Below are positions 5,375-58,767 of a stretch of 64,000 nucleotides of DNA, piece after piece. A model generated the notes under the pieces. The model ran no database searches and was not told the origin of the DNA. It saw nothing but the letters and a program-made list of their open reading frames with translations. Positions within the stretch are counted from its first letter, which is position 1, and each line of letters begins with the position of its first letter. The DNA is taken from NCBI RefSeq assembly GCF_006345805.1, contig NC_043010.1, positions 58,280,001-58,344,000 on the forward strand, written 5' to 3'. The stretch comes from Octopus sinensis (lineage: Eukaryota). Position numbers and translations under genes: made by a program.

Positions 5375-5612
5375 AAAAGTGTCTTATATGCCATCGAGTA
5401 TGGTAAGCATTTGTGATGGTGCCACATAAAAAGCACCCATGTGGTACCATGTAAAAGCACCCAGAACACTTTGTAAAGCAGGTGGCATTAGAAAGGTCAT
5501 CCAGCTGTAGAAACCAAACCAAAACAGACTGGAGTCTGGTGCAGTCTCCCCAGCTTGCCAACTCTGGACAAATTGTCCAACCTTAACCAGCATGGACAAC
5601 AGACATCAAATG
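5375..5612 (+). mobile_element. Family C repeat (RTE-LINE 3' tail or RTE-mobilised SINE)
   Basis: GCCACATAAAAAGCACC...GGTCATCCAGCTGTAGAAAC...GCCAGCATGGACAAC; same block follows the RTE ORF remnant at 56460-57170. Confidence 0.7.
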
Positions 5613-6244
5613 ATGTATGTATATATATATGCACACACACATACAAGGTGTATGGATAGGCAATTTACTGCATCATGTTGTACTTCAGGGTTCAATGCCA
5701 GGATATTGTCTTCTAGCATTGCTTTTTGTCAATCAAAGCCTGATGCAAGACATTTGAAGAAAAACAAAAATCTACGATGAAGTTCAAATGGCGTGCGCAC
5801 GTCCATTTGTGCTTATGTATATATGGGGTTGTACATGTTTGGGCATCAGTATGTTTATTAATAAATAAAATGGTAATACACATATACATGTACACACACA
5901 CACGCATGTACACACACACATGTACACACATACAGACAGATATACTAATGCCTACATACAAACGTGTACCCACATACATTTCTATATACATCCATTTATA
6001 CACCCTTATTTCCATGTATGCACTCCTATAGCTGAGCCGTATTGCTACTCCCTTATAACTCCCCACACACACATCCACCCCCATTATATATTTATTGATC
6101 AGTCATGCCTGGCTGTATTAACAGTTACACACACACACACACACACACATATACACCCAGTTAAGATATTGATTAATATACACTCATGTTCCCTTCAATA
6201 AAACATCAACCAACCTTCAGTGAGATTGCTGAGTGTTGTTGGCG

Positions 6245-10990: not shown

Positions 10991-12156
10991 AGGGCTCCCC
11001 CTAGGAGAAACTAAATAGACATCAGGAAAAATCAATCTACAACTTCAGCAACACTGGCCCCTTTCCACTAAATCTATAACCCTTATTTTCCCTCACAACC
11101 CCTTTACTTTATCTTCCCTTTATGCTAATTACACCAATTGCAGTTCCACCAAGCAATCCCAAACTTTCCCCTCCCCCCACAATCCAAGATAAACAACTCC
11201 ATTGGTTTGTATGTGTAAACCCCACAGATCCCTTAATATTTATCCCCCTTTTCCCAGAACCCTAAAATAAGATATTTTACCTCTTTGTTTTCTCCCTTCC
11301 CCTATTTCTCTACTCACCCTTATAACAAATTAGGCTTAATCAATTTTTTTCCTGACTATAGGGTGAGAAGTCAGAGTTTGGTGAAGGGAAGTTGATGTTG
11401 TGACAATAATGCACTTCTCAGAATGTATCTGAGCTTCTGTAGGAGGTAAAACAAATGGTTGTCATTATAAATTGAACTTTTACTGGAAATAACATAGGGT
11501 TTTATATATATATATATATATATAAATGGTTATGTAGTTAAAAGGATCAGTAAAATTTATTGGCATATCAGACAGTATGATGATGATGATGATGATGATG
11601 ATGGTGCTAATACAACAGAAGCTGGTATAAAATATCCCCTTTTATCCCTTGACATTCTGAGTTCAAATCTTATTGAAGTCAATATTATCCTCCATTCCTT
11701 CTGGGTTACAAACAAATACATTTGTCTGTCTGTCTGTCTGTAGATAGGTAACCCTGTGATGGACAAGCCTACCAATCAGGAGGAATGCTCACCAGCTCAA
11801 TGGGAAAGCATCATTCGAAAGCTAAAATGAAGCAAGTGCATTGTGACCAGTGATGTATAACAACATCTGATAGTCTGGTGATCACATGATCACGCAGTAT
11901 ACATATCTTTTTTCCTTTCTCTTCACTCCTCTTTCCATATCTGTATTGCTTTAGTTTTCGTCTGCTTTGTGACTTGGTGCTTAGGCTTTCAAGGTCATTA
12001 ATTGATTAATTAACCGAGTAAATGGAACTATGAATGCACCTATAATGTATACCAGAAACAGCTGTAAGTCTACAATGCACAAATAACTATGTAAACCCTA
12101 TTATTTCCAAATTTTCTTGCATTTATATACATATATATACACACACATATCTATAT

Positions 12157-17056: not shown

Positions 17057-17212
17057 GTCATTTAGAAATTAGTAAAATTAAGAGCCTTGGGTGTACCCAT
17101 CGCTCATCCTTTTACTGTTGGTAATTTTTTTATCCAAAGCAGCTCTTCTAATCATAATCAAAACCCCACTGGATTTTCTGAATTCTGTACCCCTAAAAAC
17201 AGTTATAAGAGG

Positions 17213-17600
17213 GGTAAACCCTGTTCATTGTGCAACAGCATCAGTCAGGTCAACTCCATCACAAATCATAACAGAAACGTTATGATTTATGCAACGAGTG
17301 GGACCAGTAAGGATTCCCATTTGGTGTACGCAGCAGAATGCACCAAAAACAACTTGATTTATGTTGGTTGTACAACAGAACAATTAAATAAAAGATTCAA
17401 TGGGCATAGGAGGCACAATAACAGTAATTCAACTGAACGTTTCACAACAAAAAGGCTGTAATTTTGAGGAACACTGAAAGTGCATATTCTCAGAAAATAT
17501 TCTGACCTCAAAATATTCAGTCCTCAAAACACATGAGGAGGATAAATACTTCTGTGAATTACTAATGTCACACTATGGATGAAGCAACAAAATGACAGCA
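17213..17600 (+). pseudogene. Penelope-like retroelement GIY-YIG endonuclease remnant
   Basis: CSLC...HLVYAAECTKNNLIYVGCTTEQLNKRFNGHR, then frameshifted GCNFEE/LKVHILRK and EEDKYFCELL, which is the Penelope GIY-YIG layout. Confidence 0.75.
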
Positions 17601-17844: not shown

Positions 17845-17985
17845 TTACTCGAGGCACAAGGCCCCAAATTTTGGGTGGAGGGGGCCAGTCAATTAGATCG
17901 ACCCTAGTATGCAACTGGTACTGAATTCATCGACCCTGAAAGGATGAAAGGCAAAGTCAACCTCAGTGGAATTTATAGTCAAATC
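17845..17985 (-). mobile_element. SINE, family D (partial)
   Basis: CAACTGGTAC...ATCGACCC.GAAAGGATGAAAGGCAAAGT..ACCTC core shared with 24415, 42575, 49655 and 61225. Confidence 0.8.
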
Positions 17986-18085: not shown

Positions 18086-18107
<22 letters not shown>

Positions 18108-18470
18108 GTTTAACATCTGCTTTCCATGCTAGCATGGGTTGGACGATTTTGACTGAGGGCTGGCAAACCAGATGGCTGCACCAGGCTCCAGTCTTGATCT
18201 GGCAGACTTTCTACAGCTGGATGCCCTTCCTAACGCCAACCACTCCGAGAGTGTAGTGGGTGCTTTTACATGCCACCGGCACGGGGGCCAGTCAGGTGGT
18301 ACTGGCAACGACCTTGCTCGAATCCTTTTATACTTGCCACCAGCACATGTGCCAGAAGGCGATTTTGGTAAAGATCACGCTCAAATGGTGCCCTTTTACG
18401 TGCCCACTGGCACGGAAGCCAGTTGGCTGCTCTGGCAACGATCACGCTCGAATGGTGCCCATTAATGGAT
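18086..18470 (-). mobile_element. Family C repeat (RTE-tail type)
   Basis: (CAT)n tail and CTACAGCTGGATGCCCTTCCTAACGCCAACCAC block. Confidence 0.85.
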
Positions 18471-24414: not shown

Positions 24415-24650
24415 CCTTGGTTACTACCTATTTCTTTACTACCCACAAGGGGCTAAACACAGAGAGGACAAACGAATTAAGTTGATTATATCGACCCCAG
24501 TGTGTAACTGGTACTTATTTAATCGACCCCGAAAGGATGAAAGGCAAAGTCGACGTCAGCAGAATTTGAACTCAGAACATAGCAGCAGAAGAAATACCAC
24601 TAAGCACTTCACCCGGCGTGCTAACGTTTCTGCTAGCTTGCTACCTTTTC
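24415..24650 (-). mobile_element. tRNA-head SINE, family D
   Basis: Minus-strand B-box-like GAGTTCAAATTC and core GCCTTTCATCCTTTCGGGGTCGAT. Confidence 0.85.
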
Positions 24651-32782: not shown

Positions 32783-33400
32783 CTGAAGGTAAATAATAAC
32801 GATAGTATATAAATAATTAACCAATTAGCACCTACAAATTTTTGTTCCATCAGTTTGTAGGTTACCTCCCACCACCCATATATGTAACCCACAAATATAA
32901 ACCAGAACTGTAATATTATAAGCACCAAATGTATTTTGAGATAACCCCAGCAAATATGGAAACCCTTGACACACACAAAGATGCAGCCAGCAGTTATGAA
33001 TTACAGCACTGGTAAGCCAACTTCTTTGAACACCCAATTTAGTTGAGCAAGTATAATAGGGCTTGGATAGAGATAACACACGTGAATATTGAAAGGTGTT
33101 GCTCAAACCTGGTCGCTGAGAAAGACATAAAATATTTGACAATTATAAAATTGAATTTCAAAACTAAATCTTTGTTGTTATAACAAAATCAAAGTAGATT
33201 TTCTTCAAGATATTATGCTTGGTATTATTTGTAATACAGTCTTGCATTATCATTTAATGAAATTTGTAGTACCAACCATGATGAAAGTGTTTGTGGTACC
33301 ATCTGTGGTTGCATGCAGAATTAGTGACAGTTATTTAATCAAGAAAGAACATTGTGTAGATATGGTGAGTAAGAACATGTAGAAGAAAAGGGCAACTTAC

Positions 33401-35818
33401 CAATAGAACTGATGGAGGTCTCTTCTCTGATGTTAATGTTGTCGTCCATTCACTCTGTGATTCATATTGTGGATAGAACTCACATTTTGGTTCAAGAATC
33501 TGTGTGTTTCTATTCCTCCCCTCTGTCTGTTGTTTGGTGCCAGTTTGTGTTTTAGCACTGTGTGCCAACCCTTCATGCCCTTCCCTGTTACAAACAATTG
33601 TTTGGTCAACAGCCCTACTGGTCCTTGATCTAGACTGACCACAGTTACATTTCACAATACACAATGTGATGGACACTACAATCACCACAGATACTATTAC
33701 AGCTGCTACTACAATGATAATTAATAACGTTAAGTCTATTGCTGCATCGGGCTGTAACTGAGTAGCTGTCATTATGGACGATGTCCTGTTACTGACTGTC
33801 ACACTCAAAGACACAGTAGTTGTGGCTGACAACACTGGACTACCAGAATCCTTGACCACAAGCACCAATTGGTATGAGCCAGCATCGTTGAGATGAGGTG
33901 GACGTGAGAAAGACAATTGACCAGTGAAAGAGTTCAGTGTAAACAACTGTTTATTGTTACCGTTAAGTATTCCGTATTTGAGGAAGGCATTTAAATGACT
34001 GTCTCTATCAGACGCTCTAATCACAGTGATTTCACTGGTACTTTGGGGATGATAGTGGACATCAAGAGTGAAAGGGTCAACACTAGGAAATGTAAAATAA
34101 GGGGCATTATCGTTCTCATCTAAAACCTCTACAACCACATTGGCAGTGTTGTTCAGTGATGGCGTTCCCTTGTCTTTGACAAAAACCTTGAACTTATAGA
34201 CATCCTGTTGTTCCCTGTCCAAAACTATGGACGTTGAAATGAAACCATAATCCGTAACGTGAAACGGTATACCGTTTATATTATTGCTAATTAATCTATA
34301 AGACAACTGACCGCCAGCTTCTAAATCTTGATCAGTGGCATTGATGAAACCAATCGGAAAGTTTGGTATACCATTCTCATAGGTGAGGAATTTAAATGTA
34401 TCTTTGGTAAATTGTGGTTTACCATCGTTGATGTCTGTTACTTGGATGAAGATTTTCCTCTCTGTCTTCAAAGAAGGAGTTCCTTTGTCTTCACAAGAAA
34501 TACTAATGTCATAATGATCTCGTGTCTCTCTGTCCACTGATTTCTTTAAAGTTATTTTGAATTCATTTGATCCTAAATCTAAAAGTAAGAATTTATCATG
34601 CTCTAGCTTACATTCCACCTCACCATTCTGTCCAGTATCGTTATCAATAATACTGACATAAGCTATAAAACTACCAACTTTGGTTCCTTCAGAAATGGCT
34701 GCCGTGTTCTCTTTTATCTGAGTAACAAAGTTGATATCAATTTCAGGAGGATTGTTTCTTTCATTAATTACATTCACTAAAACAATGGCTGTAGAACTTC
34801 TTGGAGGATTCCCACCATCTTTAGCCATGATAAATAGTTCATAATTTTGTTTTTTAGCTCTTCTGAAAGCTTCTTGTAGAAAAATCTCTCCTGTCATGTG
34901 ATTGAGTCTGAAATAAGTTTTCACTTTCTCTGGTGTTTCCGAACTGAAGAAATAACTAACATGACCATTTTCTCCCGAATCTAAATCTTTCGCAGACACC
35001 ATTGCAATTGGCCTGTTTCTTTGATGCGTGTTCCTTACTGAGATGTTATAAATATCTTTATTAAATACTGGTGAATTATCATTTAAGTCTATGACAGATA
35101 TGTGCACATCTAAAACACCTTGTTTCGATGGATAGCCTCCGTCTTTGGCAATAACTTGCATATTATAAGAATCTTTAACCTCTCTGTCTAATTTCCTTGC
35201 CAAAATGACTCCCAGTTCAGAACTACCAGTAATGGTTTTCCTTGCAGACAATGTAAATGGTAAGTCTGGTTTATTTCTTAACTGATATGATATCTTTGAA
35301 TTCACAACTCCAACATCTCTATCAATGGCATGTGGTAGAGTTTTGATTGTACCAATTCCATCTGTTTCGTAATAAACTATATTCTCAAGTCTTTCTGGGA
35401 ATTCTGGATGGTGGTCATTAACATCTTCTATGATTACTTTCACTTTTAAAATTCGCATAAACATGTCTGCCTGTCGGACAGCAACTTTAACGATGGTATA
35501 ACAGTCCTTTTTGGGACTGCACAGCTGCTCAGCATCCAATATCCGAGCTGTGTGAAGTTTACCTGAAGTAGTCACGTTGAACAGTTGATTAGAACCAAAT
35601 TTCCTCTGCTGAAGTTGGTTAAATGTTGTTTGGAGGGAACCTTGGTATGGGGACGTATTTAGAAGAAGAAAGTCTGCTGCGATATCACCAACATAGGTTC
35701 CAGTATTGCGTTCTTCTTCAACATGGTAAGTGATATCAACTAAACACAAGAAGCCAGGGAAGAGGTGAAAGTTTAATGCTAACGTAATCAACACATGCCA
35801 ATATGTAAATGTAGTCAT
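33401..35818 (-). CDS. PCDH: Protocadherin, large exon: signal peptide, 6 EC repeats, TM helix, start of cytoplasmic tail (family-level call; paralog unknown)
   Basis: Motifs DVNDHHP, LDRE, DLNDNSP, VDRE, DINDGKP, LDRE, DENDNAP; Cys-X5-Cys in EC1 (CSPKKDC); hydrophobic TM LLIIIVVAAVIVSVVIVVSITLCIV. First ATG at 35818 with an upstream in-frame TGA; acceptor (TTC)n-TTTCAG| before 35851; donor TTG|GTAAGT at 33400. Track residues after L807 are intron read-through. Confidence 0.96.
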
Positions 35819-35927
35819 CACTAAAATATCTGTGATGGGGAAATATCAAACCTGAAAGAAGAAGAAGAAGAAGAAGGAAACTGTGTGAGGGACATCAGGA
35901 AAGGAACAAAGACAAACAGCAAGTTAA

Positions 35928-40500: not shown

Positions 40501-40789
40501 TTACTATATTCTTTATTATTCCTTGATGGCCTTTTAGTTGCTGAGTGAGCCCGGTCAGCTCAGCTTGAGTAGTTTTATGACTCAATATCAACAAACAATG
40601 CAGTTATTCTATCACAGCTGATCTTCTTAAATTTTATTTCAATTTAAAAATGCCTGAAAGTTTGAGCTCCTAATTCGATTCTGTAGCCTTCAATAAGATC
40701 ACCAGTAGGACCATAAGTGAGGTGGTAGGGTCACTGAAACTTCACTAATTTTGTTACATAAATAGTATATATATATATATATATATATA

Positions 40790-41043
40790 CTGTTGTGTCT
40801 TGAGAGAGTCATTCTCTTTTAGTGCCTTATAATTTAACACACTCACAGGTAAAATTTCCACTTCTTTTTTATTTTTCTAAAATTTTGATTGCGTCTTGCA
40901 ACCTTTTCGAAAGTCAAAACTATTGAAAAGGTTGCAAGACACAATGAAAATTTTAGAAGAATAAAAATGAAGTGGAAATGTTACCGGTGAGTGTGTTAAA
41001 TTATAAGGCACTAAAAGAGAATGACTCTCTCAAGACACAACAG
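40790..41043. repeat. 254-bp palindrome (124-bp arms, 6-nt loop)
   Basis: Arms are colinear with no net indel, about 8 mismatches, outer 57 bp perfect; loop TCAAAA at 40914-40919. Confidence 0.95.
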
Positions 41044-41109
41044 AATATACTTCAACACACAAACTCACACAAAGAATTTTTCAAACCAAATCCTAAAACG
41101 AAATATATG

Positions 41110-41355: not shown

Positions 41356-41453
41356 CTTCTTACAGCCGTTTCCATTAATACTCAATAATTAAAACACTAA
41401 TTCGTGCATTAAATTTGCATTTATATTTTATGAGCATAATTTCATCAGAGAAG
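41356..41453 (-). ncRNA. Putative type I hammerhead ribozyme in a Penelope-like pLTR remnant
   Basis: Stem I CTTCT/AGAAG; core CTGATGA; stem II ATTA-TGCTCA/TGAGTA-T-TAAT with a long loop; GAAA; self-complementary stem III ACGGCTGT; cleavage triplet GTA; A.G mismatch at the base of stem II. Confidence 0.65.
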
Positions 41454-41569
41454 AAGATATACCTTAAGATGTAACACGCCGAACTATCAGTTCATACCAG
41501 CAGACTAGTAGTCAAGTACATCGACATCAAAAATCCTGCTGTGCTTGAGGAGACCTACAATGGAAATTG

Positions 41570-41880
41570 TAATTGTGATACCTGTGCCGGTGACACGTAA
41601 AAAGCACCATCCGTACGTGGCCAATGCCAGCGCCGCCTTGACTGGTTTTGGTGCCAGTGACACGTACAAAGCACCAACCGATCGTGGCCATTGCCAGCCT
41701 CCCCTGGCACGTGAAAAGCACCCACTACACTCACAGAGTGGTTGGCATTAGGAAGGGCATCCAGCTGTAGAAACACTGCCAGATCAGACTGGAGCCTGGT
41801 GCAGCCTCCTGGCTTCCCAGACACCAGTCGAACCGTCCAACCCATGCTAGCATGGAAAGTGGACGTTAAACGATGATGAT
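41570..41880 (+). mobile_element. Family C repeat (RTE-tail type)
   Basis: GGAAGGGCATCCAGCTGTAGAAAC...CCCATGCTAGCATGGAAAGTGGACGTTAAACGATGATGAT. Confidence 0.88.
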
Positions 41881-42574
41881 ACACACATGCATATAGTTAT
41901 CGATCTAGAAAGATAGATTGATAGATACAACACACAATATATATATATATATATATATATTTGTATATATATGCATGTGTGTGTATATATATATATATAT
42001 ATATGCTTGTGTGCATGTGTGTGTAGCAGGAATATTTGGCTGTGCCAAACCCGAACTGCCCAGAAGTTGAACCTGGATCAAGGGATCTGATACAAAAACA
42101 AGTAAAGAACTGAATGCAATTTCTTCAATTATTGATGACATCACTAAAACACTAACCACTTGGACATCACATAAAACAGAATCTCATTAACAATCCCACC
42201 TTTTGAAATTCTTTTCACTTTCAAAGAACTACCTACAAACAGAATTCTCTTTCTGCTAGCAATCCATGTGTATCTATAAGTCAGCCAGAAGCATCATTGC
42301 AAGTTCCACAGCACCATCATGATAATGACAACAGTGTAGCTGTAGCACCAAGAATAATGGTACCACAGCACAATGATGGTGATGACACACCTAAACCACT
42401 GAGATGGTAGACTAAACCAGTGGAGCATACACTTGTCATGCTGCTAGACAGTCCCTTCTATTCTTTTCTCCATATCAGCTGTCAAACTGTTTACTTGTGC
42501 AAATATCTTTTCTGTGATTCGTAATAAGGGCATCACACAGTGTGGTAATGGTACAAATAATATCTCTGATCTTG

Positions 42575-42892
42575 TTCTTATCGACCCCAAAAGGAGGAAA
42601 GGCAAAGTTGATCTTGGTGGAATTTAAACTCAGAATGTAAAGACAGACAAAATACCTATTTCTTTATTACCCACAAGAGGCTAAACACAGAAGGGACAAA
42701 CAAGGACAGACAAACGGATTAAGTCGATTGTATCGAGCCCAGTGCGTAACTGGTACTTATTTAATCGACCCCCGAAAGGATGAAAGGCAAAGTTGACCTC
42801 GGCGGAATTTGAACTCAGTACATAGCGGCAGACAAAATACCACTAAGCATTTCACCCGGCATGCTAAGATTTCTGCAAGTTTGCGGCCTTAC
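42575..42892 (-). mobile_element. SINE, family D: one partial copy followed by one near-full copy
   Basis: Core TCGACCCC.AAAGGA..AAAGGCAAAGTTGA occurs twice, at about 42580 and 42765. Confidence 0.85.
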
Positions 42893-43488
42893 AACAATGT
42901 TGATAATGTTACATATACATACATACATACAATATGATTAAACTGCCTGATGTATGTATGTGAATTGGAAGTAGGAATTTGTTTTGGGAATTATTTATTC
43001 ACCATTACATATGTTTCATTTGCTAATATGAATTACAAAGTCGTACCAGTTGGATAAACATATCAGAAATTTCCTATCAGAAATTCTTCAGACAGAGAAT
43101 CAAATAATGGTGAATAAATAATGCCAAAACTTTTTCAAACTTCCTGTTAAGAATTATAATAATTTTGCAAACAATATTTCCAAAATTTTCAACTCTAATA
43201 TTTTCCTCACATAAATACAGTAGCCACAACAACTGCATACTGGAGAGTAAGACTGGAATGAGCAGGTGTGCTTCAAGCAGACACTGCTTATATTTTACCC
43301 TATCTATCTGTATGTGTATGTGTGTGGTGTGTGTGTGTGTGTACAGAATACGAAGAGTTTAGGCCACTGGTGATCTAAATTAATAGGTGCACTGTCTAAG
43401 CACTTGAATAAGTTACTAGGATCCAAGTTCCCAACAGGCTGGAGTTGAGGATCTGTAGCCTACTTCTGTGTCAGCAAGTATAAATTAA

Positions 43489-43572
43489 AGGAAGAGGAAA
43501 ACAAAATCAAAGCAGGACAAGCTTGTCAGATCAGATAAGCTTGTCCTACCTTCATTTTGTTTTCCTCTTCCT
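43489..43572. mobile_element. 84-bp foldback MITE, TTAA|AGG...CCT|TTAA (Kolobok/T2-like)
   Basis: 45-bp arms including the flanks, 4 mismatches, 6-nt loop. Confidence 0.8.
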
Positions 43573-44207
43573 TTAATTAATGTATGGATGGATGTATGGA
43601 AGGACATATGTATACATCCATGCATCTATCCATCTACCTTTTTCTCCCTCAACCCCCCCCCCTCTCTCTCTCTATTTTTAAACTACACTAGATGTATGTC
43701 TATATTATGTGATAACAATATTACTTTCAGGAAAATGAAAAACATTCCAAAAATCCTTCCCAAATCCAATCTGTTTTTTATTCCCATATATTTACCTACT
43801 GTTAGTTACAAAACCAAGATTATCTCCTGAAACACTCTCTTATTATTACAATGCATTCATATTTTACCTGTTGTTTGTTGCGTATTAATAAATAATGAAA
43901 TAATTGCTTAATTCACAGAGGTTATAGCTGTGGGAATTCACACACATTAATAGTAATTTTCAGTTGGTTTTGTTCCAATTTTTACCAGTATTCTCTGACA
44001 CCAATGTCTGGTTTTTCTTTACATCCAAAGTAAGCATAATATATTTCCCTTTTGATTCAATCTACTACTATTTGATTTTGCACACATCCAAATCTACATA
44101 TCACATTCACCTGCCCAATATCATAAGCTGCTTTAAAATCATATTCACTAAGTGGACGATAAAATCTATTAAATTGCTTGTGTTAACTGTTATAAAATAT
44201 CTTTATA

Positions 44208-44335
44208 CAGGTGCAGACGTGGCTGTGTGGTAAGAAGCTTGCTTCCCAACCACATGGTTCCAGGTTCAGTTTCACTGCATGGCACCTTGGGCAAGTGTCT
44301 TTCAATGTAGCCTTGGGCCAACCAAAGCCTTGCAT
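44208..44335 (+). mobile_element. SINE, family A (head)
   Basis: TGGCTGTGTGGTAAGAAGCTTGCTTCCCAACCACATGGTTCCAGGTTCAG. Confidence 0.85.
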
Positions 44336-44339
44336 TTGA

Positions 44340-44625
44340 GCGAGAGACCAATAAAACTCCTTGTAACACCAAAGATGAACTGAAGGCAAGGATTATGGCA
44401 GCATTCACCAACTTAAACAAGGAGACCGCCCTGAAGAGTTGCAGGAGATTCCAAAGTCGTCTGGAGGCTGTGGTTGAAGTCAATGGCGATTTCATTGAAT
44501 AAATTTACTCTTTAGTATTTCAAAATATTTTTATGTAATCTTGGTAAAGATATCTGTTAAAATGAGATGTCAGGGTTAATTTCAATTTGTGTAATTTAGA
44601 CGACAGTTTATTCACTGCACCCTGT
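44340..44625 (+). mobile_element. 3' end of a maT-like Tc1/mariner element
   Basis: NTKDELKARIMAAFTNLNKETALKSCRRFQSRLEAVVEVNGDFIE*, then TIR ...TGCACCCTG-TA; same protein family as the 7600-9140 element. Confidence 0.8.
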
Positions 44626-44634
44626 ATACAGCTT

Positions 44635-44680
<46 letters not shown>

Positions 44681-44909
44681 TACCTAGGTTAATCCTAATC
44701 AAGCAAGTCTTTGATGATATGAACTCTATCTGTCATCATTCTGTCGATTTAAAGAGTATCTAGGACTACATTATCCAGTGTTTCCTTTGGTAATACAACA
44801 GTTGCAATATGAGGAAGATTTGGCTGCTATTTCCAGTACATCAAATGACCGTGTAGAGACTGTCTGAGATGGTGAATGGATAGTAGTAATGATGATGATG
44901 ATAATAGGT

Positions 44910-45285
44910 GTAGGAGCGGTTGAGAGGTTAAGAAGCTTGCTTACCAACCACATGGCTCTGAGTTCAGTCCCACTGCATGGCACCTTGGGCAAGTGTCTTC
45001 TACTTTAGCCCTAGGCCAACCAAAGCCTTGTGAATGGATTTGATAGATGGAAATTGAAAGAAGCCCTTTGTATGTGTGTGTGTGTCTGTCTGTCCTCACC
45101 ACTGCTTGAAAACCAGTGTTGGTTTGTTTATGTCCCCATAATTCTTCAGTACAGTAATAGACACTGATAGACTAAGTGCAAGATTTAAGAGAAAATAAGT
45201 CCTAGGGTCAATTTGTTGGACTAACACACTTCAAGGTGGTGCTCTAGCTTGGCCGCACTTAACTGATTGAAACAAATGGAAAATA
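44910..45285 (+). mobile_element. SINE, family A (long form)
   Basis: Head and tail blocks as in the other copies. Confidence 0.8.
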
Positions 45286-45556
45286 GAAAAGAGGAAGACG
45301 ATGTCGATGACGGCGAAGGTGGTCGGGGTGATATCGTATTCCATGAGAAAAACCTGGGAACAACGGAATTATCTCCCTTGTGTTATATTTCCTTCAATGC
45401 TTTGACAGAGTGCGTGTGTGTGTGAGCAGTTGCTGTTATTAATGTGTTGTTAGTTGCTGTTATTTGCCTGATTGAGCAAATTTTTGTTCAAAAACTTTTC
45501 CAACCATTACCATCCCGCTTTTGTTCCGTGTATTGTCTGACAAAGACTACATTATC

Positions 45557-45870
45557 CAAGGGATCCCAACCATTTTTTTCCATCTATGGACCCCTTTGAT
45601 TACTGTGTATTCTGGTGGACCCACGTAGCAATTCGATGTTTAAAAACTAGCTTTAGAGAAACTTCTTTCATAATTCATATTTCCGTTCTAAAACATTAAC
45701 TTGCGTAGTTTAAATGTTAGGGAAAGAGACCCACCTGTTTCTTGCAATATATACCAAGACATACATCTAAAGCAAATTTTTTTTTTAGGGACCTTTAAAA
45801 TACTATTGTGGATCCCCAGTTCACTATTTTACTTGCGTGGACCCTTAGGGGCCCATACAGACCCTGAGAT
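45557..45870 (+). mobile_element. hAT-type MITE remnant related to 55149-55635
   Basis: Shared CAACCATTTTTT..CTATGGAC.C.TTTGATT start. Confidence 0.45.
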
Positions 45871-46399
45871 ATCTTTTTATAAGAAGACAGAGTGGGATTT
45901 CAGAGAAATTTGGCTGCTGTTTTTAGCAGGTGTACTGACCCATGCCTCCATGTTGTTGTTAGTGTTGTGATAAGACAGTAGAAATCTTTGCCATCTGACT
46001 GGACTGCTGCAACATGGAATGAAGTGTTTTGCTCAAGGACACAGTACACTGTCGGGTCCAGGAATGGAAACCACAATCTTGTGATCATCTTCACGTTTTG
46101 GCCATTAACTTTCTATAATCACACATCATCCTGCCACCACCACCACCACCACCACCACTGCCACTGTCACCACCATTCTGACAATGCTGCCTTTCACAGC
46201 AAATGATCATCAAAGACAATACCACTGACCTGGCCCCATGGTGGTCTGTTCTTGGACAGGAACTATGCATGTGGACCTTCCCCAGTGCTCTCTATATGAC
46301 CTGGCAAGCCCCCACCATCACTGCCACTGCTGAGTTGTTTACTGGGACTTTGGCTACCATAAATAAACCTTGGGATAGATACTGGAATTGCTTTCCCAT

Positions 46400-46620
46400 T
46401 GCCTCTCCAGGCAGGTGGGATTTGAACTCAGAATGTCGAGATCTACTGTAAAGCATTCCTGCCAACATGCCGATGATTCTGCCATTCTACCACCTGCAGA
46501 GGAACAGAAAATGAAGTGCTTTGCTCAAGAACACAATGTGCAGCCCAGTCCTGGAACTGAACCCATGACTTAGCCATTGTGAGTACAGTGTCCTAACTAC
46601 TGGGCCACGTGCTTTCACTA
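46400..46620 (-). mobile_element. Adjacent family D and family B SINE heads
   Basis: TTTGAACTCAGAA...GATTCTGCCA; GCTCAAGAACACAA...CTAACTACTGGGCCAC. Confidence 0.6.
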
Positions 46621-53771: not shown

Positions 53772-54445
53772 ACAGGTGTAGCTGTGTGGTAATAAGTTTA
53801 CTTCACAACCACATGGTTCTGGGTTCAGTCCCACTGCATGGCACCTTGGGCAAGTATCTTCTGCAATAGCCTTGGGCTGACCAAAGTCTTGAGTGGATTT
53901 AGTTGAGGGAAACTGAAAAGCTCATAGTATGTATGTGCATGTGTATGTATGGGCCTCACGGAGGCAAGGTGGCTGAGTTCCCTTGAGCATTGGGCCTTAT
54001 GGAGGCAAGTGGCTGAGTTCCTTTCGAGTGTTCGGCCTCACAGAGGTGAGGTGGCTGAGTTCCTTTTGAATGGGCCTCATGGAGTTTCTTTTGAGCATTG
54101 GGCTCCATGGGGGCAAAGTGGCCGATTTCCTTTTGGGTGTTGGGCCTCATGTAGACAAGTGCCCAGACCTTTGGCATTATGTCATGCTTGAGAAGACCCA
54201 TCAAGCTGAGCAAACTCACAGTTGTGGCAGATACCGGTGTCACACAAATGGCACTCGTGCCAGTGACACATAAAAACACTCATTACACCTTCAGAGTGGT
54301 TGGTGTTAGGAAGGGCATCCAGCTGTAGAAAACCATGCCAAATCAGATTGGAGCCTGGCACAGCCTTCCAGCATGCCAGCCCAGTCAAACGTCCAACCCT
54401 TGCCAGCATGGACAACTGATGTTAAAGGATGATGATGATGATGAT
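53772..54445 (+). mobile_element. Composite SINE: family A head, 41-bp minisatellite, family C tail
   Basis: Head 53772-53930; unit GGGCCTCA.GGAGGCAAGGTGGCTGAGTTCC x about 5 at 53951-54155; RTE-type tail to 54445. Confidence 0.75.
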
Positions 54446-54479
54446 ACATATATATATATATATATATCGTGTGTGTGTA

Positions 54480-54730
54480 TATATATATATCGTGTGTGTG
54501 TATATATATATATATATGTATGTACCTTTGTGTCTGTGTTTGTTTCCCACCACCACTTGACAGCCTGTGTTGATTAGTTTACATCCCTGTAACTTAGTGG
54601 TTCAGCAAAAGAAACTGATAAAATAAGTACCGGGCTTAAAAAAAACAATAAGTCCCGGGGTTAATTCCTTCAATTAAAATTCTTCAAGGTGGTGCCCCAG
54701 CATGGCCACGGTCTAATGACTCAAATGAAA
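54480..54730 (+). mobile_element. Family A tail segment
   Basis: CCACTTGACAGCC...AAATAAGTACC...GTGCCCCAGCATGGCCAC. Confidence 0.65.
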
Positions 54731-57578: not shown

Positions 57579-58767
57579 ACACACATATATATACATATAC
57601 ACACACACATTATATATATAATGTTGTAATTGAAAGGCCTGATTTCCAGTACTCTGAGCAACTTGTTTCCAATCATCAGCTGTATGCACATGGCTAGTAT
57701 TTGTTATGCAAGTACAAACCTCTTTGAATTTTTTTATGGTTCAGAAAAAAAAAAATGTTGGTTTTCAAAATGTTTAATTAATAGGTTTTATTGATATATG
57801 TTTTAATGTGTGCATGTGTGTGTGTGTGTGTGTGAGTATATGCATAAAGGCATATGTATATAGGTATATACATATATATGAGTGTATAATTCCCTGAGTG
57901 TGCATATGTGTATATGTTTGCATCTGTACAGTCACACACAAAATGAACACCCACATACATTCGCATTGTTTTTAAAAGCATTAATTAAAAGTATTAATTA
58001 AAAGTATTACACAAAAGTATTATTCTGGAACATTGCTTAAGCAGCAATGCAATTTCATCAGTTCGATTGTATATAGTTTATGAGGTTCATAATGGTATTG
58101 CCATGAGAACCAGAAATGAAATCGGAAGTGTGAACTCGAAGCCGCTGTTTTCATGTGTTTCGTTCACAAAGGTTTTTAAGCGAAGGAACATTGGGGTAAA
58201 TGTTTTCTTTAAACTTTCATTTTATATTTCACAGATGCTCAGACAGAGGATATTTCAAAAGAAAATCAGCCTTGGTTTACCAGCTGATGACTGGAAACAA
58301 GCAATTCTGACTGAGAGAAATCAAAGCCTTTTAGTTATGATGGATTAAAAGTTGCTCTATGTCTGCATTGAGTCCTGTAATTTACCACTTCTGGTGAATC
58401 AGCAGATATATATATATATAATATGCACAAAGACACATGCATATACATATACACATACATACATACATGAGTGTCCAACTAATACACCTGCTTGTTGATC
58501 ATACACCTGTCTTTGTCTTTTGTTTTTCTATAAATTTCAGTTATATGTGTGTGTGTGTGTGTATATGTTGTGTCTGGGGAGAGATGTATTATCTTAATGC
58601 CTTATTATCTAACACACTCACTGGTTCAGTTTCCACTCATTTATCATTTATGTTTTTTTCCAAACATTTTCGTTGCCTTTGCAACCTTGTCAGTGGATGT
58701 TGACTCTGTCCTTTATTAGAGCTGTGTTCTTTGAAAATGAAGTATATATATATATTTATATAAATGA

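What the first reader, a model, noticed from the sequence alone, without database searches (positions are those of the whole stretch)
41356..41453. Near-intact dimer-type hammerhead ribozyme on the protocadherin sense strand
Seen (minus): CTTCT-CTGATGA-A-ATTATGCTCA...(long loop)...TGAGTATTAAT-G-GAAAC-GGCT-GTA-AGAAG. All invariant core bases are present and stem I is 5 bp. Stem III ACGGCUGU is too short for a monomer hairpin but pairs fully with itself (8 bp with two G.U pairs). Established: this is the signature of Penelope-associated hammerheads that cleave as dimers. Inference: it lies 5.5 kb upstream of the main exon in sense orientation, so if the 5' intron spans it the pre-mRNA could self-cleave. 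The A.G mismatch at the base of stem II may reduce activity.
Basis: partly seen in the sequence, partly recalled or inferred. Interest (0 to 1): 0.72.

Follow-up and report, generated by a model that had tools for sequence, protein, structure and literature searches.

The report
Paired hammerhead ribozyme motifs, octopus intergenic DNA
The flagged sequence is a real hammerhead-ribozyme motif, far beyond chance and with a second one 1.6 kb upstream, most likely left by a retroelement in an octopus genome, and nothing found here shows that it cuts the protocadherin transcript.

Summary
It has the full hammerhead core, a 5-bp stem I, a long bulged stem II with an A.G at its base, and a 2-bp stem III with a tetraloop. 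The predicted cut lies between 41361 and 41360.

It is not a chance match. Among 4197 placements in the window that satisfy the helices, the true core boxes match exactly twice. Composition-matched decoy boxes predict about 2.5e-4 exact matches.

The second match (B, 43095..43002) is new. It lies on the same strand and has the same architecture and nearly the same box spacing, 69 versus 67 nt.

Several things count against a stronger claim:
- No Rfam hammerhead model reports either motif, even at E<=10.
- The G10.1-C11.1 pair is absent from both.
- Loop 2 is 46 nt or more.
- Stem I is not predicted once natural flanks are folded in.
- No reverse transcriptase or GIY-YIG remnant lies nearby.
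- A and B share no detectable flank homology.
- No further copy exists in 170 kb of octopod DNA.

The coding sequence starts inside the large exon, so a 5' intron spanning the motif is only a supposition.

Best reading: these are retroelement-type (Penelope-like or retrozyme-like) type-I hammerhead motifs in intergenic DNA. They are a new member of a known kind, of modest interest.

The parts
41356..41453 (-). Motif A, the flagged type-I hammerhead motif. Stem I is 41453-41449 paired with 41360-41356. CUGAUGA is 41448-41442. The stem II 5' strand is 41441-41431, loop 2 is 41430-41385 (46 nt), and the stem II 3' strand is 41384-41373. GAAA is 41372-41369. Stem III is C-GGCU-G at 41368-41363. 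U16.1 is 41362 and A17 is 41361. The predicted cut is 41361|41360.
   Evidence: Sequence; descriptor hit; coordinates checked; chance tests.
43002..43095 (-). Motif B, a second hammerhead-like motif: CUGU|CUGAAGA|AUUU-C-UGAUA..loop..UAUUA-GC-AAAU|GAAA|C-AUAU-G|UA|AUGG. The predicted cut is 43006|43005. It is weaker than A: stem I is 4 bp with two G.U pairs, and its minimum-energy fold is not the hammerhead fold.
   Evidence: Found by a descriptor fixed before the motif was seen. Sequence; pattern match; fold; union and architecture-specific tests.
41585..41885 (-). SINE copy inserted between B and A. It ends about 130 nt 5' of A and does not include A.
   Evidence: 75-88% identity to 18099-18413 and to other copies. 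The alignment loses similarity near 41585.
42566..42917 (.). Copies of a second SINE family, also inserted between B and A. Without the repeat blocks, B's 3' end and A's 5' end would be about 0.7 kb apart.
   Evidence: up to 21 copies in the 170 kb of DNA held.
33335..35821 (-). Protocadherin large exon (828-aa ORF). The ATG is at 35818 and is followed by a signal peptide. A lies 5.5 kb and B 7.2 kb 5' of it on the same strand.
   Evidence: Pfam Cadherin hit at 4.4e-72; translation; 85% identity to O. vulgaris CAI9733546.

Best explanation
A (41453..41356) and B (43095..43002) are genuine type-I hammerhead ribozyme motifs of the kind carried by metazoan retroelements, namely the terminal repeats of Penelope-like elements and retrozymes. 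They sit in direct orientation in intergenic DNA upstream of an octopus protocadherin gene, and SINEs inserted between them later.

In the parent element, such motifs cut read-through or tandem transcripts 3' of the GUH triplet. That gives unit-length RNA with 5'-OH and 2',3'-cyclic phosphate ends.

Shown: the motifs exist, they are far beyond chance, and they share one architecture.

Inferred: their retroelement origin. Also inferred: at this locus they are weak or inactive and play no part in protocadherin expression. The reasons for that second inference are:
- there is no G10.1-C11.1 pair;
- stem II is A/U-rich and bulged, with a 46-nt loop;
- stem I is 5 bp and loses to flanking pairings;
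- no stable A-B dimer can form.
For: - The complete core and three-helix layout can be read directly.
- Among 4197 structure-satisfying placements in the window, the true boxes match exactly twice and never at 1-2 mismatches. The 539 decoy box pairs give 0 exact matches, 4 at one mismatch and 108 at two, which extrapolates to about 2.5e-4 expected.
- The bare sequence pattern gives 2 matches against 0.02 in shuffles.
- Control DNA gives 0 hits.
- A and B lie on the same strand, 1645 nt apart from cut site to cut site.
- Their box spacing is 69 versus 67 nt.
- Both have GAAAC + 4-nt self-complementary loop + GUA.
- Both have a stem II of 4 bp, then a bulge, then 5-6 bp starting U-A, G.U.
- Their interiors are marginally alike (p about 0.06).
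- The isolated A RNA does fold into stems I and II (pair probabilities 0.8-0.99).
- The literature describes PLE hammerheads with a larger helix II, a bulge in helix II, a short helix I, a palindromic helix III and extreme sequence variability. Most occur as single motifs, probably related to truncated PLEs (PMC4209133).
- Octopus genomes carry Penelope-like elements (PMC13282606, PMC8967140).
- The giant squid genome has 235 Rfam Hammerhead_1 hits (PMC6962438).
Against: - No Rfam hammerhead family is reported at E<=10 in searches of 801, 401 or 111 nt.
- The G10.1-C11.1 pair, which PMC4209133 lists as a hallmark, is A.G in A and A-U in B.
- Loop 2 is 46 nt or more, which is unusual.
- The 5 kb 5' of A on the same strand holds no RT or GIY-YIG remnant.
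- A and B flanks show no detectable homology (z below 1.3).
- No further copy exists in the window or in 105 kb of other octopod loci.
- B's minimum-energy fold is not the hammerhead fold.
- Neither RNA is more stable than its shuffles.
- If both were old neutral copies of one repeat, two perfect cores beside unalignable flanks would be unexpected.
Confidence: 0.6

Rival explanations
1. Chance match. A/T-rich octopus DNA, full of inverted repeats and microsatellites, produces hammerhead-like arrangements by accident. A was picked out of many windows, and it and perhaps B have no ribozyme ancestry.
For: - The loosest descriptor that accepts A expects about 0.01 hits per window, which means hundreds per genome.
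- There is no Rfam hit.
- There is no thermodynamic signal (z = -0.69 and -0.43).
- The hallmark G10.1-C11.1 pair is missing from both motifs.
Against: - With the canonical stem III architecture required, the expectation is about 2.5e-4 per window and two exact-core hits are seen.
- The bare pattern gives 0.02 expected against 2 observed.
- B was found with a descriptor fixed beforehand. It lies on the same strand within 1.7 kb of A and has nearly the same spacing.
- Controls give 0 hits.
Confidence: 0.12
2. One reading: the motif lies in a 5' intron or 5' extension of the protocadherin pre-mRNA and self-cleaves it, as a monomer or as an intermolecular dimer, thereby regulating the gene.
For: - The motif is in sense orientation, 5.5 kb 5' of the exon.
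- The core is intact in both A and B, although neither sits in a detectable repeat. That could mean selection.
- A natural hammerhead with a U.U mismatch at the base of helix II still cleaves, more efficiently in dimeric constructs (axolotl HHR_Amex2, PMC7229834).
Against: - The ATG and signal peptide are in the large exon.
- No 5' exon is known for this gene or its paralogues.
- No last exon of an upstream gene is detectable in the window.
- Stem I probability is about 0 in natural context.
- A-A dimers need two transcripts, and the A-B dimer is unstable.
- Single PLE-type motifs show no detectable cleavage in vitro, and dimers only low cleavage (PMC4209133).
- In vertebrates, retrozymes are depleted from introns and exons (bioRxiv 10.64898/2026.07.22.740005).
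- The upstream region is not conserved in Argonauta.
Confidence: 0.05
3. B and A delimit one non-autonomous, retrozyme-like unit. It is about 1.65 kb now and about 0.8 kb before the SINE insertions. It is, or was, transcribed and processed at both hammerheads into a unit-length linear or circular RNA.
For: - The two motifs are in direct orientation and share one architecture.
- No coding remnant lies between them.
- The size is in the range of known retrozymes (PMC4918200, PMC7229834).
Against: - The sequences flanking A and B are not homologous, as they would be in tandem repeats or terminal repeats.
- Animal retrozymes described so far are 170-400 nt tandem repeats (PMC7229834).
- SINE insertions would have disrupted the unit.
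- No other copies were seen.
Confidence: 0.1
4. A box C/D snoRNA-like element rather than a hammerhead: a terminal 5-bp stem, then UGAUGA as the C box, with a D box near the 3' stem.
For: - The length is about 98 nt.
- The terminal stem sits directly next to (C)UGAUGA.
- Weak Rfam matches to C/D families overlap A (sn1502 15.5 bits, snoU18 14 bits, SNORD49 7.9 bits) and B (SNORD31 19.9 bits).
Against: - All scores are far below the gathering thresholds of 37-60 bits.
- The D-box position reads CUGU, not CUGA.
- The position before UGAUGA is C, not a purine.
- A snoRNA reading does not explain the GAAA box, the self-complementary stem III or the second motif.
Confidence: 0.02

Closest known systems
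Hammerhead motifs of Penelope-like elements (min-HHRs and their variants; Cervera & de la Pena 2014, PMC4209133; reviewed in PMC6765202)
   Same: - Type-I topology.
- A short helix I of 4-5 bp.
- A helix II longer than the canonical 4 bp, with a bulge.
- A short, self-complementary helix III (C15.2-G16.2 plus a loop).
- High sequence variability between copies.
- Frequent occurrence as isolated motifs or as same-strand pairs.
   Different: - G10.1-C11.1 is absent.
[quoted passage not shown]
- Loop 2 is 46 nt or more.
- No terminal repeat, RT or GIY-YIG context was found.
- No consensus family could be shown.
Type-I hammerheads of metazoan non-LTR retrozymes and satellite DNAs (coral, mussel, axolotl and newt; PMC7229834)
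   Same: - The helix III, 2 bp capped by a tetraloop, is the form PMC7229834 describes as 'similar to invertebrate HHRs'.
- The DNA context has low GC.
- Copies lie in direct orientation.
- A natural example with a mismatch at the base of helix II exists (axolotl HHR_Amex2).
   Different: - Retrozyme monomers are 170-400 nt tandem repeats with homologous units. Here the spacing is 1.6 kb and the flanks are not homologous.
- Canonical members have a 4-bp helix II and conserved loop 1-loop 2 contacts, which are not recognisable here.
Rfam hammerhead models (Hammerhead_1 and its relatives)
   Same: The same invariant core and three-way junction.
   Different: Not reported even at E<=10 in a 111-nt search. 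The roughly 55-nt insertion in helix II, the non-canonical 10.1/11.1 position and the weak stems probably cost the score.
Hammerheads inside vertebrate genes (the intronic HH9/HH10 type and the discontinuous 3'-UTR hammerhead cited in PMC4209133 as Martick et al. 2008)
   Different: Those are conserved across species and lie in known transcribed positions. Here neither transcription nor conservation could be shown.

Membership tests
Hammerhead ribozyme (any type) | Invariant core: C3 U4 G5 A6 N7 G8 A9; G12 A13 A14; A15.1-U16.1; H17 not G | tested here: met
   A has CUGAUGA ... GAAA ... U-A. B has CUGAAGA ... GAAA ... U-A. Both are exact matches.
Hammerhead ribozyme (any type) | Three helices (I, II, III) around the core, formed by the RNA | tested here: inconclusive
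   The isolated A RNA folds into stems I and II (P 0.8-0.99). With 20-50 nt or more of natural flank, stem I has P about 0. B's minimum-energy fold is not the hammerhead fold. Neither RNA beats its shuffles.
Hammerhead ribozyme (any type) | Site-specific self-cleavage 3' of H17 | not testable with these tools
   This needs in vitro transcription and cleavage, or mapping of RNA ends.
Rfam hammerhead families | Covariance-model score at or above the gathering threshold | tested here: not met
   No hit at gathering over the whole window. No hammerhead family at E<=10 in 801, 401 or 111 nt.
PLE-associated hammerheads (PMC4209133) | Highly conserved G10.1-C11.1 pair | tested here: not met
   A has A.G and B has A-U.
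PLE-associated hammerheads (PMC4209133) | [quoted passage not shown] | tested here: inconclusive
   A has an A after A9, but it faces an unpaired G, giving a 1x1 mismatch rather than a bulge. B has none.
PLE-associated hammerheads (PMC4209133) | Self-complementary 15.2-16.2 pair and loop 3 (dimer-capable helix III) | tested here: met
   A is ACGGCUGU, with a homodimer energy of -9.7. B is ACAUAUGU, at -7.0. The A-B heterodimer is -0.1.
PLE-associated hammerheads (PMC4209133) | Location in the terminal repeat of an element encoding RT and GIY-YIG endonuclease, or of a recognisable truncated copy | tested here: not met
   There is no Pfam RT or GIY-YIG hit in three frames of 41454-46400 on the minus strand. 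The only GIY-YIG fragment is at 17087-17461 on the plus strand, with no RT next to it.
PLE-associated hammerheads (PMC4209133) | Membership of a genomic consensus family with covariation | not testable with these tools
   The source genome cannot be searched. There is no other copy in the window or in 105 kb of octopod loci. An exact-pattern scan of metagenome contigs found none.
Metazoan non-LTR retrozymes (PMC7229834) | Short (170-400 nt) homologous tandem repeats, each with one type-I hammerhead | tested here: not met
   The spacing is 1645 nt. The flanks of A and B are not homologous. No tandem repeat was found at the site.
Box C/D snoRNA | C box RUGAUGA and D box CUGA flanked by a terminal stem, with a family model score above threshold | tested here: not met
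   The D-box position reads CUGU. The best C/D matches score 8-20 bits against thresholds of 37-60.

The most novel reading that the evidence does not exclude
A and B have perfect cores, yet they lie in otherwise unique, unalignable sequence. The window shows no degraded copies of the motif: there are 0 hits at 1-2 core mismatches. That pattern would fit motifs held by selection. Under this reading they form a cephalopod-specific pair of long-helix-II hammerheads. The pair would process a minus-strand transcript upstream of, or running into, a protocadherin gene. Alternatively, it would define a new retrozyme-like family of about 0.8 kb.
Probability: 0.12. Interest if true: 0.65.

Novelty: new member of a known kind. 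Interest (0 to 1): 0.33.

Why it matters
Hammerhead motifs tied to Penelope-like elements and retrozymes are already known in thousands of copies across animal genomes, so one more pair in an octopus is not surprising in itself.

Three things are useful here:
- The pair shows that a motif invisible to the Rfam models can still be shown to be non-random with a decoy-core control.
- It gives two concrete, testable cut sites next to a member of the expanded octopus protocadherin family.
- If the pair proved to be transcribed and active, it would be a rare case of a ribozyme acting on or beside a neuronal adhesion gene. Nothing found here supports that.

Tried and rejected
- **Rfam.** I searched at gathering threshold over the whole window, and at E<=10 on 801, 401 and 111 nt. 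No hammerhead family was reported.
- **Other copies of the A region.** None in the window or in the octopod loci. A is not part of the adjacent SINE.
- **Penelope coding remnants.** Pfam on three frames of the 5 kb 5' of A found nothing. Ten ORF fragments at 19-24 kb also gave nothing. The protein search with the GIY-YIG ORF found no homologue.
- **Orthologous locus.**
  - Argonauta (L001) aligns only in the exon.
  - The O. vulgaris locus (L002) shares with the window only a 1.75-kb tract at 99.3%.
  - O. bimaculoides (L006) shares only parts of that tract, at 97-99%. L003 (O. sinensis) was fetched but not compared with the window.
  - The N-terminal 171 aa have no close relative in the protein database; the best identities are 51-58%.
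  - Exact look-ups of window ORFs failed, and so did the look-up of P0001.
- **Metagenome contigs.** An exact-pattern scan gave 0 matches.
- **Partner copy by stem III sequence.** GAAACAGCTGTA occurs at 12055 and 26672, but neither site has a CUGANGA box upstream, so both are chance.
- **Homology between A and B.** Local alignment of the motifs and their flanks is not significant. Global alignment of the interiors is marginal, p about 0.06.
- **Factorised chance estimate.** Treating boxes and structure as independent gave 0.02-0.03 per window. I rejected this as an overestimate: most structure-satisfying placements appear to lie in simple repeats, where the boxes would not occur. The decoy test replaces it.
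- **Covariation between A and B.** I did not use it as evidence, because both were selected for having helices.
- **The snoRNA reading** was rejected.
- **Lunse et al. 2017** (PMC5785218) is not held in the paper library.

Full report
**1. What is in the sequence**

On the minus strand from 41453 to 41356 the window reads CTTCT-CTGATGA-A-ATTATGCTCA-(46 nt)-TGAGTATTAAT-G-GAAA-C-GGCT-G-TA-AGAAG.
- The conserved hammerhead boxes CUGAUGA and GAAA are present.
- The A15.1/U16.1 pair and an A at position 17 are present.
- Stem I is 5 bp.
- Stem II is 4 bp, a one-nucleotide bulge, then 6 bp, with an A.G opposition at its base.
- The segment ACGGCUGU can pair with a second copy of itself (-9.7 kcal/mol).
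- The predicted scissile bond is 41361|41360.

The window is octopus nuclear DNA at about 36% GC. It has one large cadherin ORF on the minus strand at 33335..35821. That ORF is 85% identical to an O. vulgaris protocadherin. The motif lies 5.5 kb 5' of the ORF, in the same orientation.

**2. Is it more than chance?**

A descriptor just permissive enough to accept the motif finds only this site in the window. It expects 0.0075-0.0125 sites per 64 kb in Markov simulations. With 719 scrambled-core decoys run on the real window, it expects 0.008. On its own that is a modest result, equal to hundreds of sites per genome.

I then looked for a partner copy with a second descriptor fixed in advance. 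It required stem II to start with a pair and the 15.1-16.1 segment to be fully self-complementary. It found a second motif, B, at 43095..43002 on the same strand. B reads CUGU-CUGAAGA-AUUU-C-UGAUA...UAUUA-GC-AAAU-GAAA-C-AUAU-G-UA-AUGG.

The strongest test is.
- I listed all 4197 placements in the real window that satisfy the helices and the 8-nt self-complementary stem III segment.
- The true boxes match exactly at two placements, A and B. They match at none with one or two mismatches.
- The 539 composition-matched decoy box pairs give 0 exact matches, 4 with one mismatch and 108 with two.
- Extrapolating those counts gives about 2.5e-4 exact matches expected per window.

Other tests agree.
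- The tool's own dinucleotide shuffles of the bare pattern CTGANGA-N{42,72}-GAAACNNNNGTH give 0.02 expected against 2 observed.
- The reversed window and 105 kb of other octopod loci give nothing.
- Five loci hold one unrelated short-gap match to the bare pattern, and it has no stems.

Chance is therefore a poor explanation for the pair, and for A once the canonical stem III architecture is taken into account.

**3. How alike are A and B?**

They share the following:
- the same strand;
- a box-to-box spacing of 69 versus 67 nt;
- the GUA cleavage triplet;
- a C-G pair plus a 4-nt self-complementary loop in stem III;
- a stem II of 4 bp, an asymmetry, then 5-6 bp beginning U-A, G.U.

Their interiors align only marginally better than random (p about 0.06). 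Their flanks do not align at all.

Both lie in sequence that is unique within the 170 kb of octopod DNA I could hold. Two SINE families and microsatellites are inserted between them. Without those repeat blocks the gap between the motifs would be about 0.7 kb.

**4. What argues against a working, canonical ribozyme**

- None of Rfam's hammerhead models reports A or B, even at E<=10 in a 111-nt search.
- The G10.1-C11.1 pair is one of the features Cervera & de la Pena use to argue that PLE hammerheads are real (PMC4209133). It is A.G in A and A-U in B.
- Loop 2 is 46 nt or more.
- Neither RNA is more stable than its shuffles.
- B's minimum-energy fold is not the hammerhead fold.
- A's stem I disappears from the predicted ensemble once 20-50 nt or more of natural flank are included. 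A competing 17-nt inverted repeat overlaps the 3' strand of stem II.
- An A-B dimer through stem III is essentially unstable (-0.1 kcal/mol). The tandem copy therefore does not rescue a dimer mechanism in cis.

One point runs the other way. PMC7229834 describes a natural amphibian hammerhead with a U.U mismatch at the base of helix II. That motif still cleaves, and more efficiently in dimeric constructs. The mismatch in A is therefore not necessarily fatal.

It calls a helix III of 2 bp capped by a tetraloop the more stable form, 'similar to invertebrate HHRs'. It reports efficient self-cleavage for the HHRs of most invertebrate retrozymes.

**5. The Penelope link**

The architecture fits published PLE variants: a short helix I, a long bulged helix II and a self-complementary helix III. 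Motifs occur singly or as same-strand pairs and vary extremely in sequence (PMC4209133, PMC6765202). Octopus genomes do carry Penelope-like elements (PMC13282606, PMC8967140).

I found no direct link, however.
- The 5 kb 5' of A on its own strand holds no RT or GIY-YIG remnant.
- The only GIY-YIG fragment in the window is at 17087-17461 on the opposite strand, with no RT beside it. It has no retrievable homologue.
- No terminal-repeat homology joins A and B.

A retroelement origin is therefore an inference from architecture and arrangement. It is not a demonstrated membership.

**6. The pre-mRNA idea**

The ORF's first methionine (35818) is followed by a signal peptide, so the coding sequence begins in the large exon. 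The ranges on record for the nearest paralogues in Argonauta, O. vulgaris and O. sinensis begin at the ATG. They extend 3' to a small last exon and show nothing 5' of the start.

The window holds no recognisable last exon of an upstream neighbour whose intron might span the motif. Whether any minus-strand transcript crosses 41.4 kb cannot be tested here.

No orthologous locus could be obtained for a conservation test.
- The Argonauta locus aligns only in the exon.
- The O. vulgaris and O. bimaculoides relatives share only a 1.75-kb tract inside the exon, at 97-99% identity. It looks like gene conversion.
- The N-terminal third of the protein has no close relative in the database.

**7. Verdict**

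The best explanation, at about 0.6, is a pair of retroelement-type type-I hammerhead motifs in intergenic DNA, probably weak or inactive in place. Its Penelope attribution is plausible but unproven. Its proposed effect on the protocadherin transcript has no support.

This is a new member of a known kind, of modest interest. The least ordinary reading still open is that the two perfect cores are maintained by selection. I put that at about 0.12.

Noticed in passing
window 43002-43095 (-): A second hammerhead-like motif (B) lies 1.64 kb 5' of the flagged one on the same strand. It has the same stem III architecture and nearly the same box spacing. It sits inside a weak 180-nt palindrome at 42967-43144.
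   Followed up: yes
window 33585-35335 (-): The central 1751 nt of the protocadherin exon are 99.3% identical to the O. vulgaris paralogue in L002, and parts of that tract are 97-99% identical to O. bimaculoides L006. The N- and C-terminal coding parts are only about 50-60% identical, and the flanking DNA is unrelated. This looks like a gene-conversion tract between clustered paralogues.
   Followed up: partly
window 33335-33409 (-): The ORF runs past the position where its relatives splice (after ...EKRPPS) to a stop at 33335. No counterpart of the relatives' last exon (…LPKWLPKR) exists anywhere in the window. The gene has no annotated equivalent in the protein database and may be unannotated or decaying.
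   Followed up: partly
window 17087-17461 (+): An isolated ORF has a GIY-YIG endonuclease hit (Pfam E = 1.4e-6) preceded by a CxxC motif. No reverse transcriptase was found in the ORF fragments scanned at 19-24 kb, and the protein search retrieved no homologue. It may be a remnant of a Penelope-like element.
   Followed up: partly
window 40784-41049: A 250-nt near-perfect palindrome (91.6% self-complementary) lies about 300 nt 3' of motif A. A diverged copy is at 58546-58705, so this is a foldback or MITE-like repeat.
   Followed up: no
window 41585-41885 (-), 18099-18413 (+), 54264-54543, 5448-5645; also 42566-42917, 24458-24647, 17887-17981: Two abundant SINE families occur in many copies in the window and in all the Octopus loci examined (L002, L004, L006).
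   Followed up: partly
L002 15474-16064 (-); L003 14221-15102 (-) and 16190-17101 (+): Reverse-transcriptase ORFs (Pfam RVT_1) lie in the roughly 9-kb intron of the O. vulgaris and O. sinensis paralogue. They have no GIY-YIG hit, so they are probably LINE-type.
   Followed up: no
window 43057-43114 (-) and 41377-41451 (-): Weak sub-threshold Rfam matches to box C/D snoRNA families (SNORD31 19.9 bits, snoU18 14 bits) overlap the 5' halves of B and A. They probably reflect the shared UGAUGA/CUGA-like boxes.
   Followed up: yes
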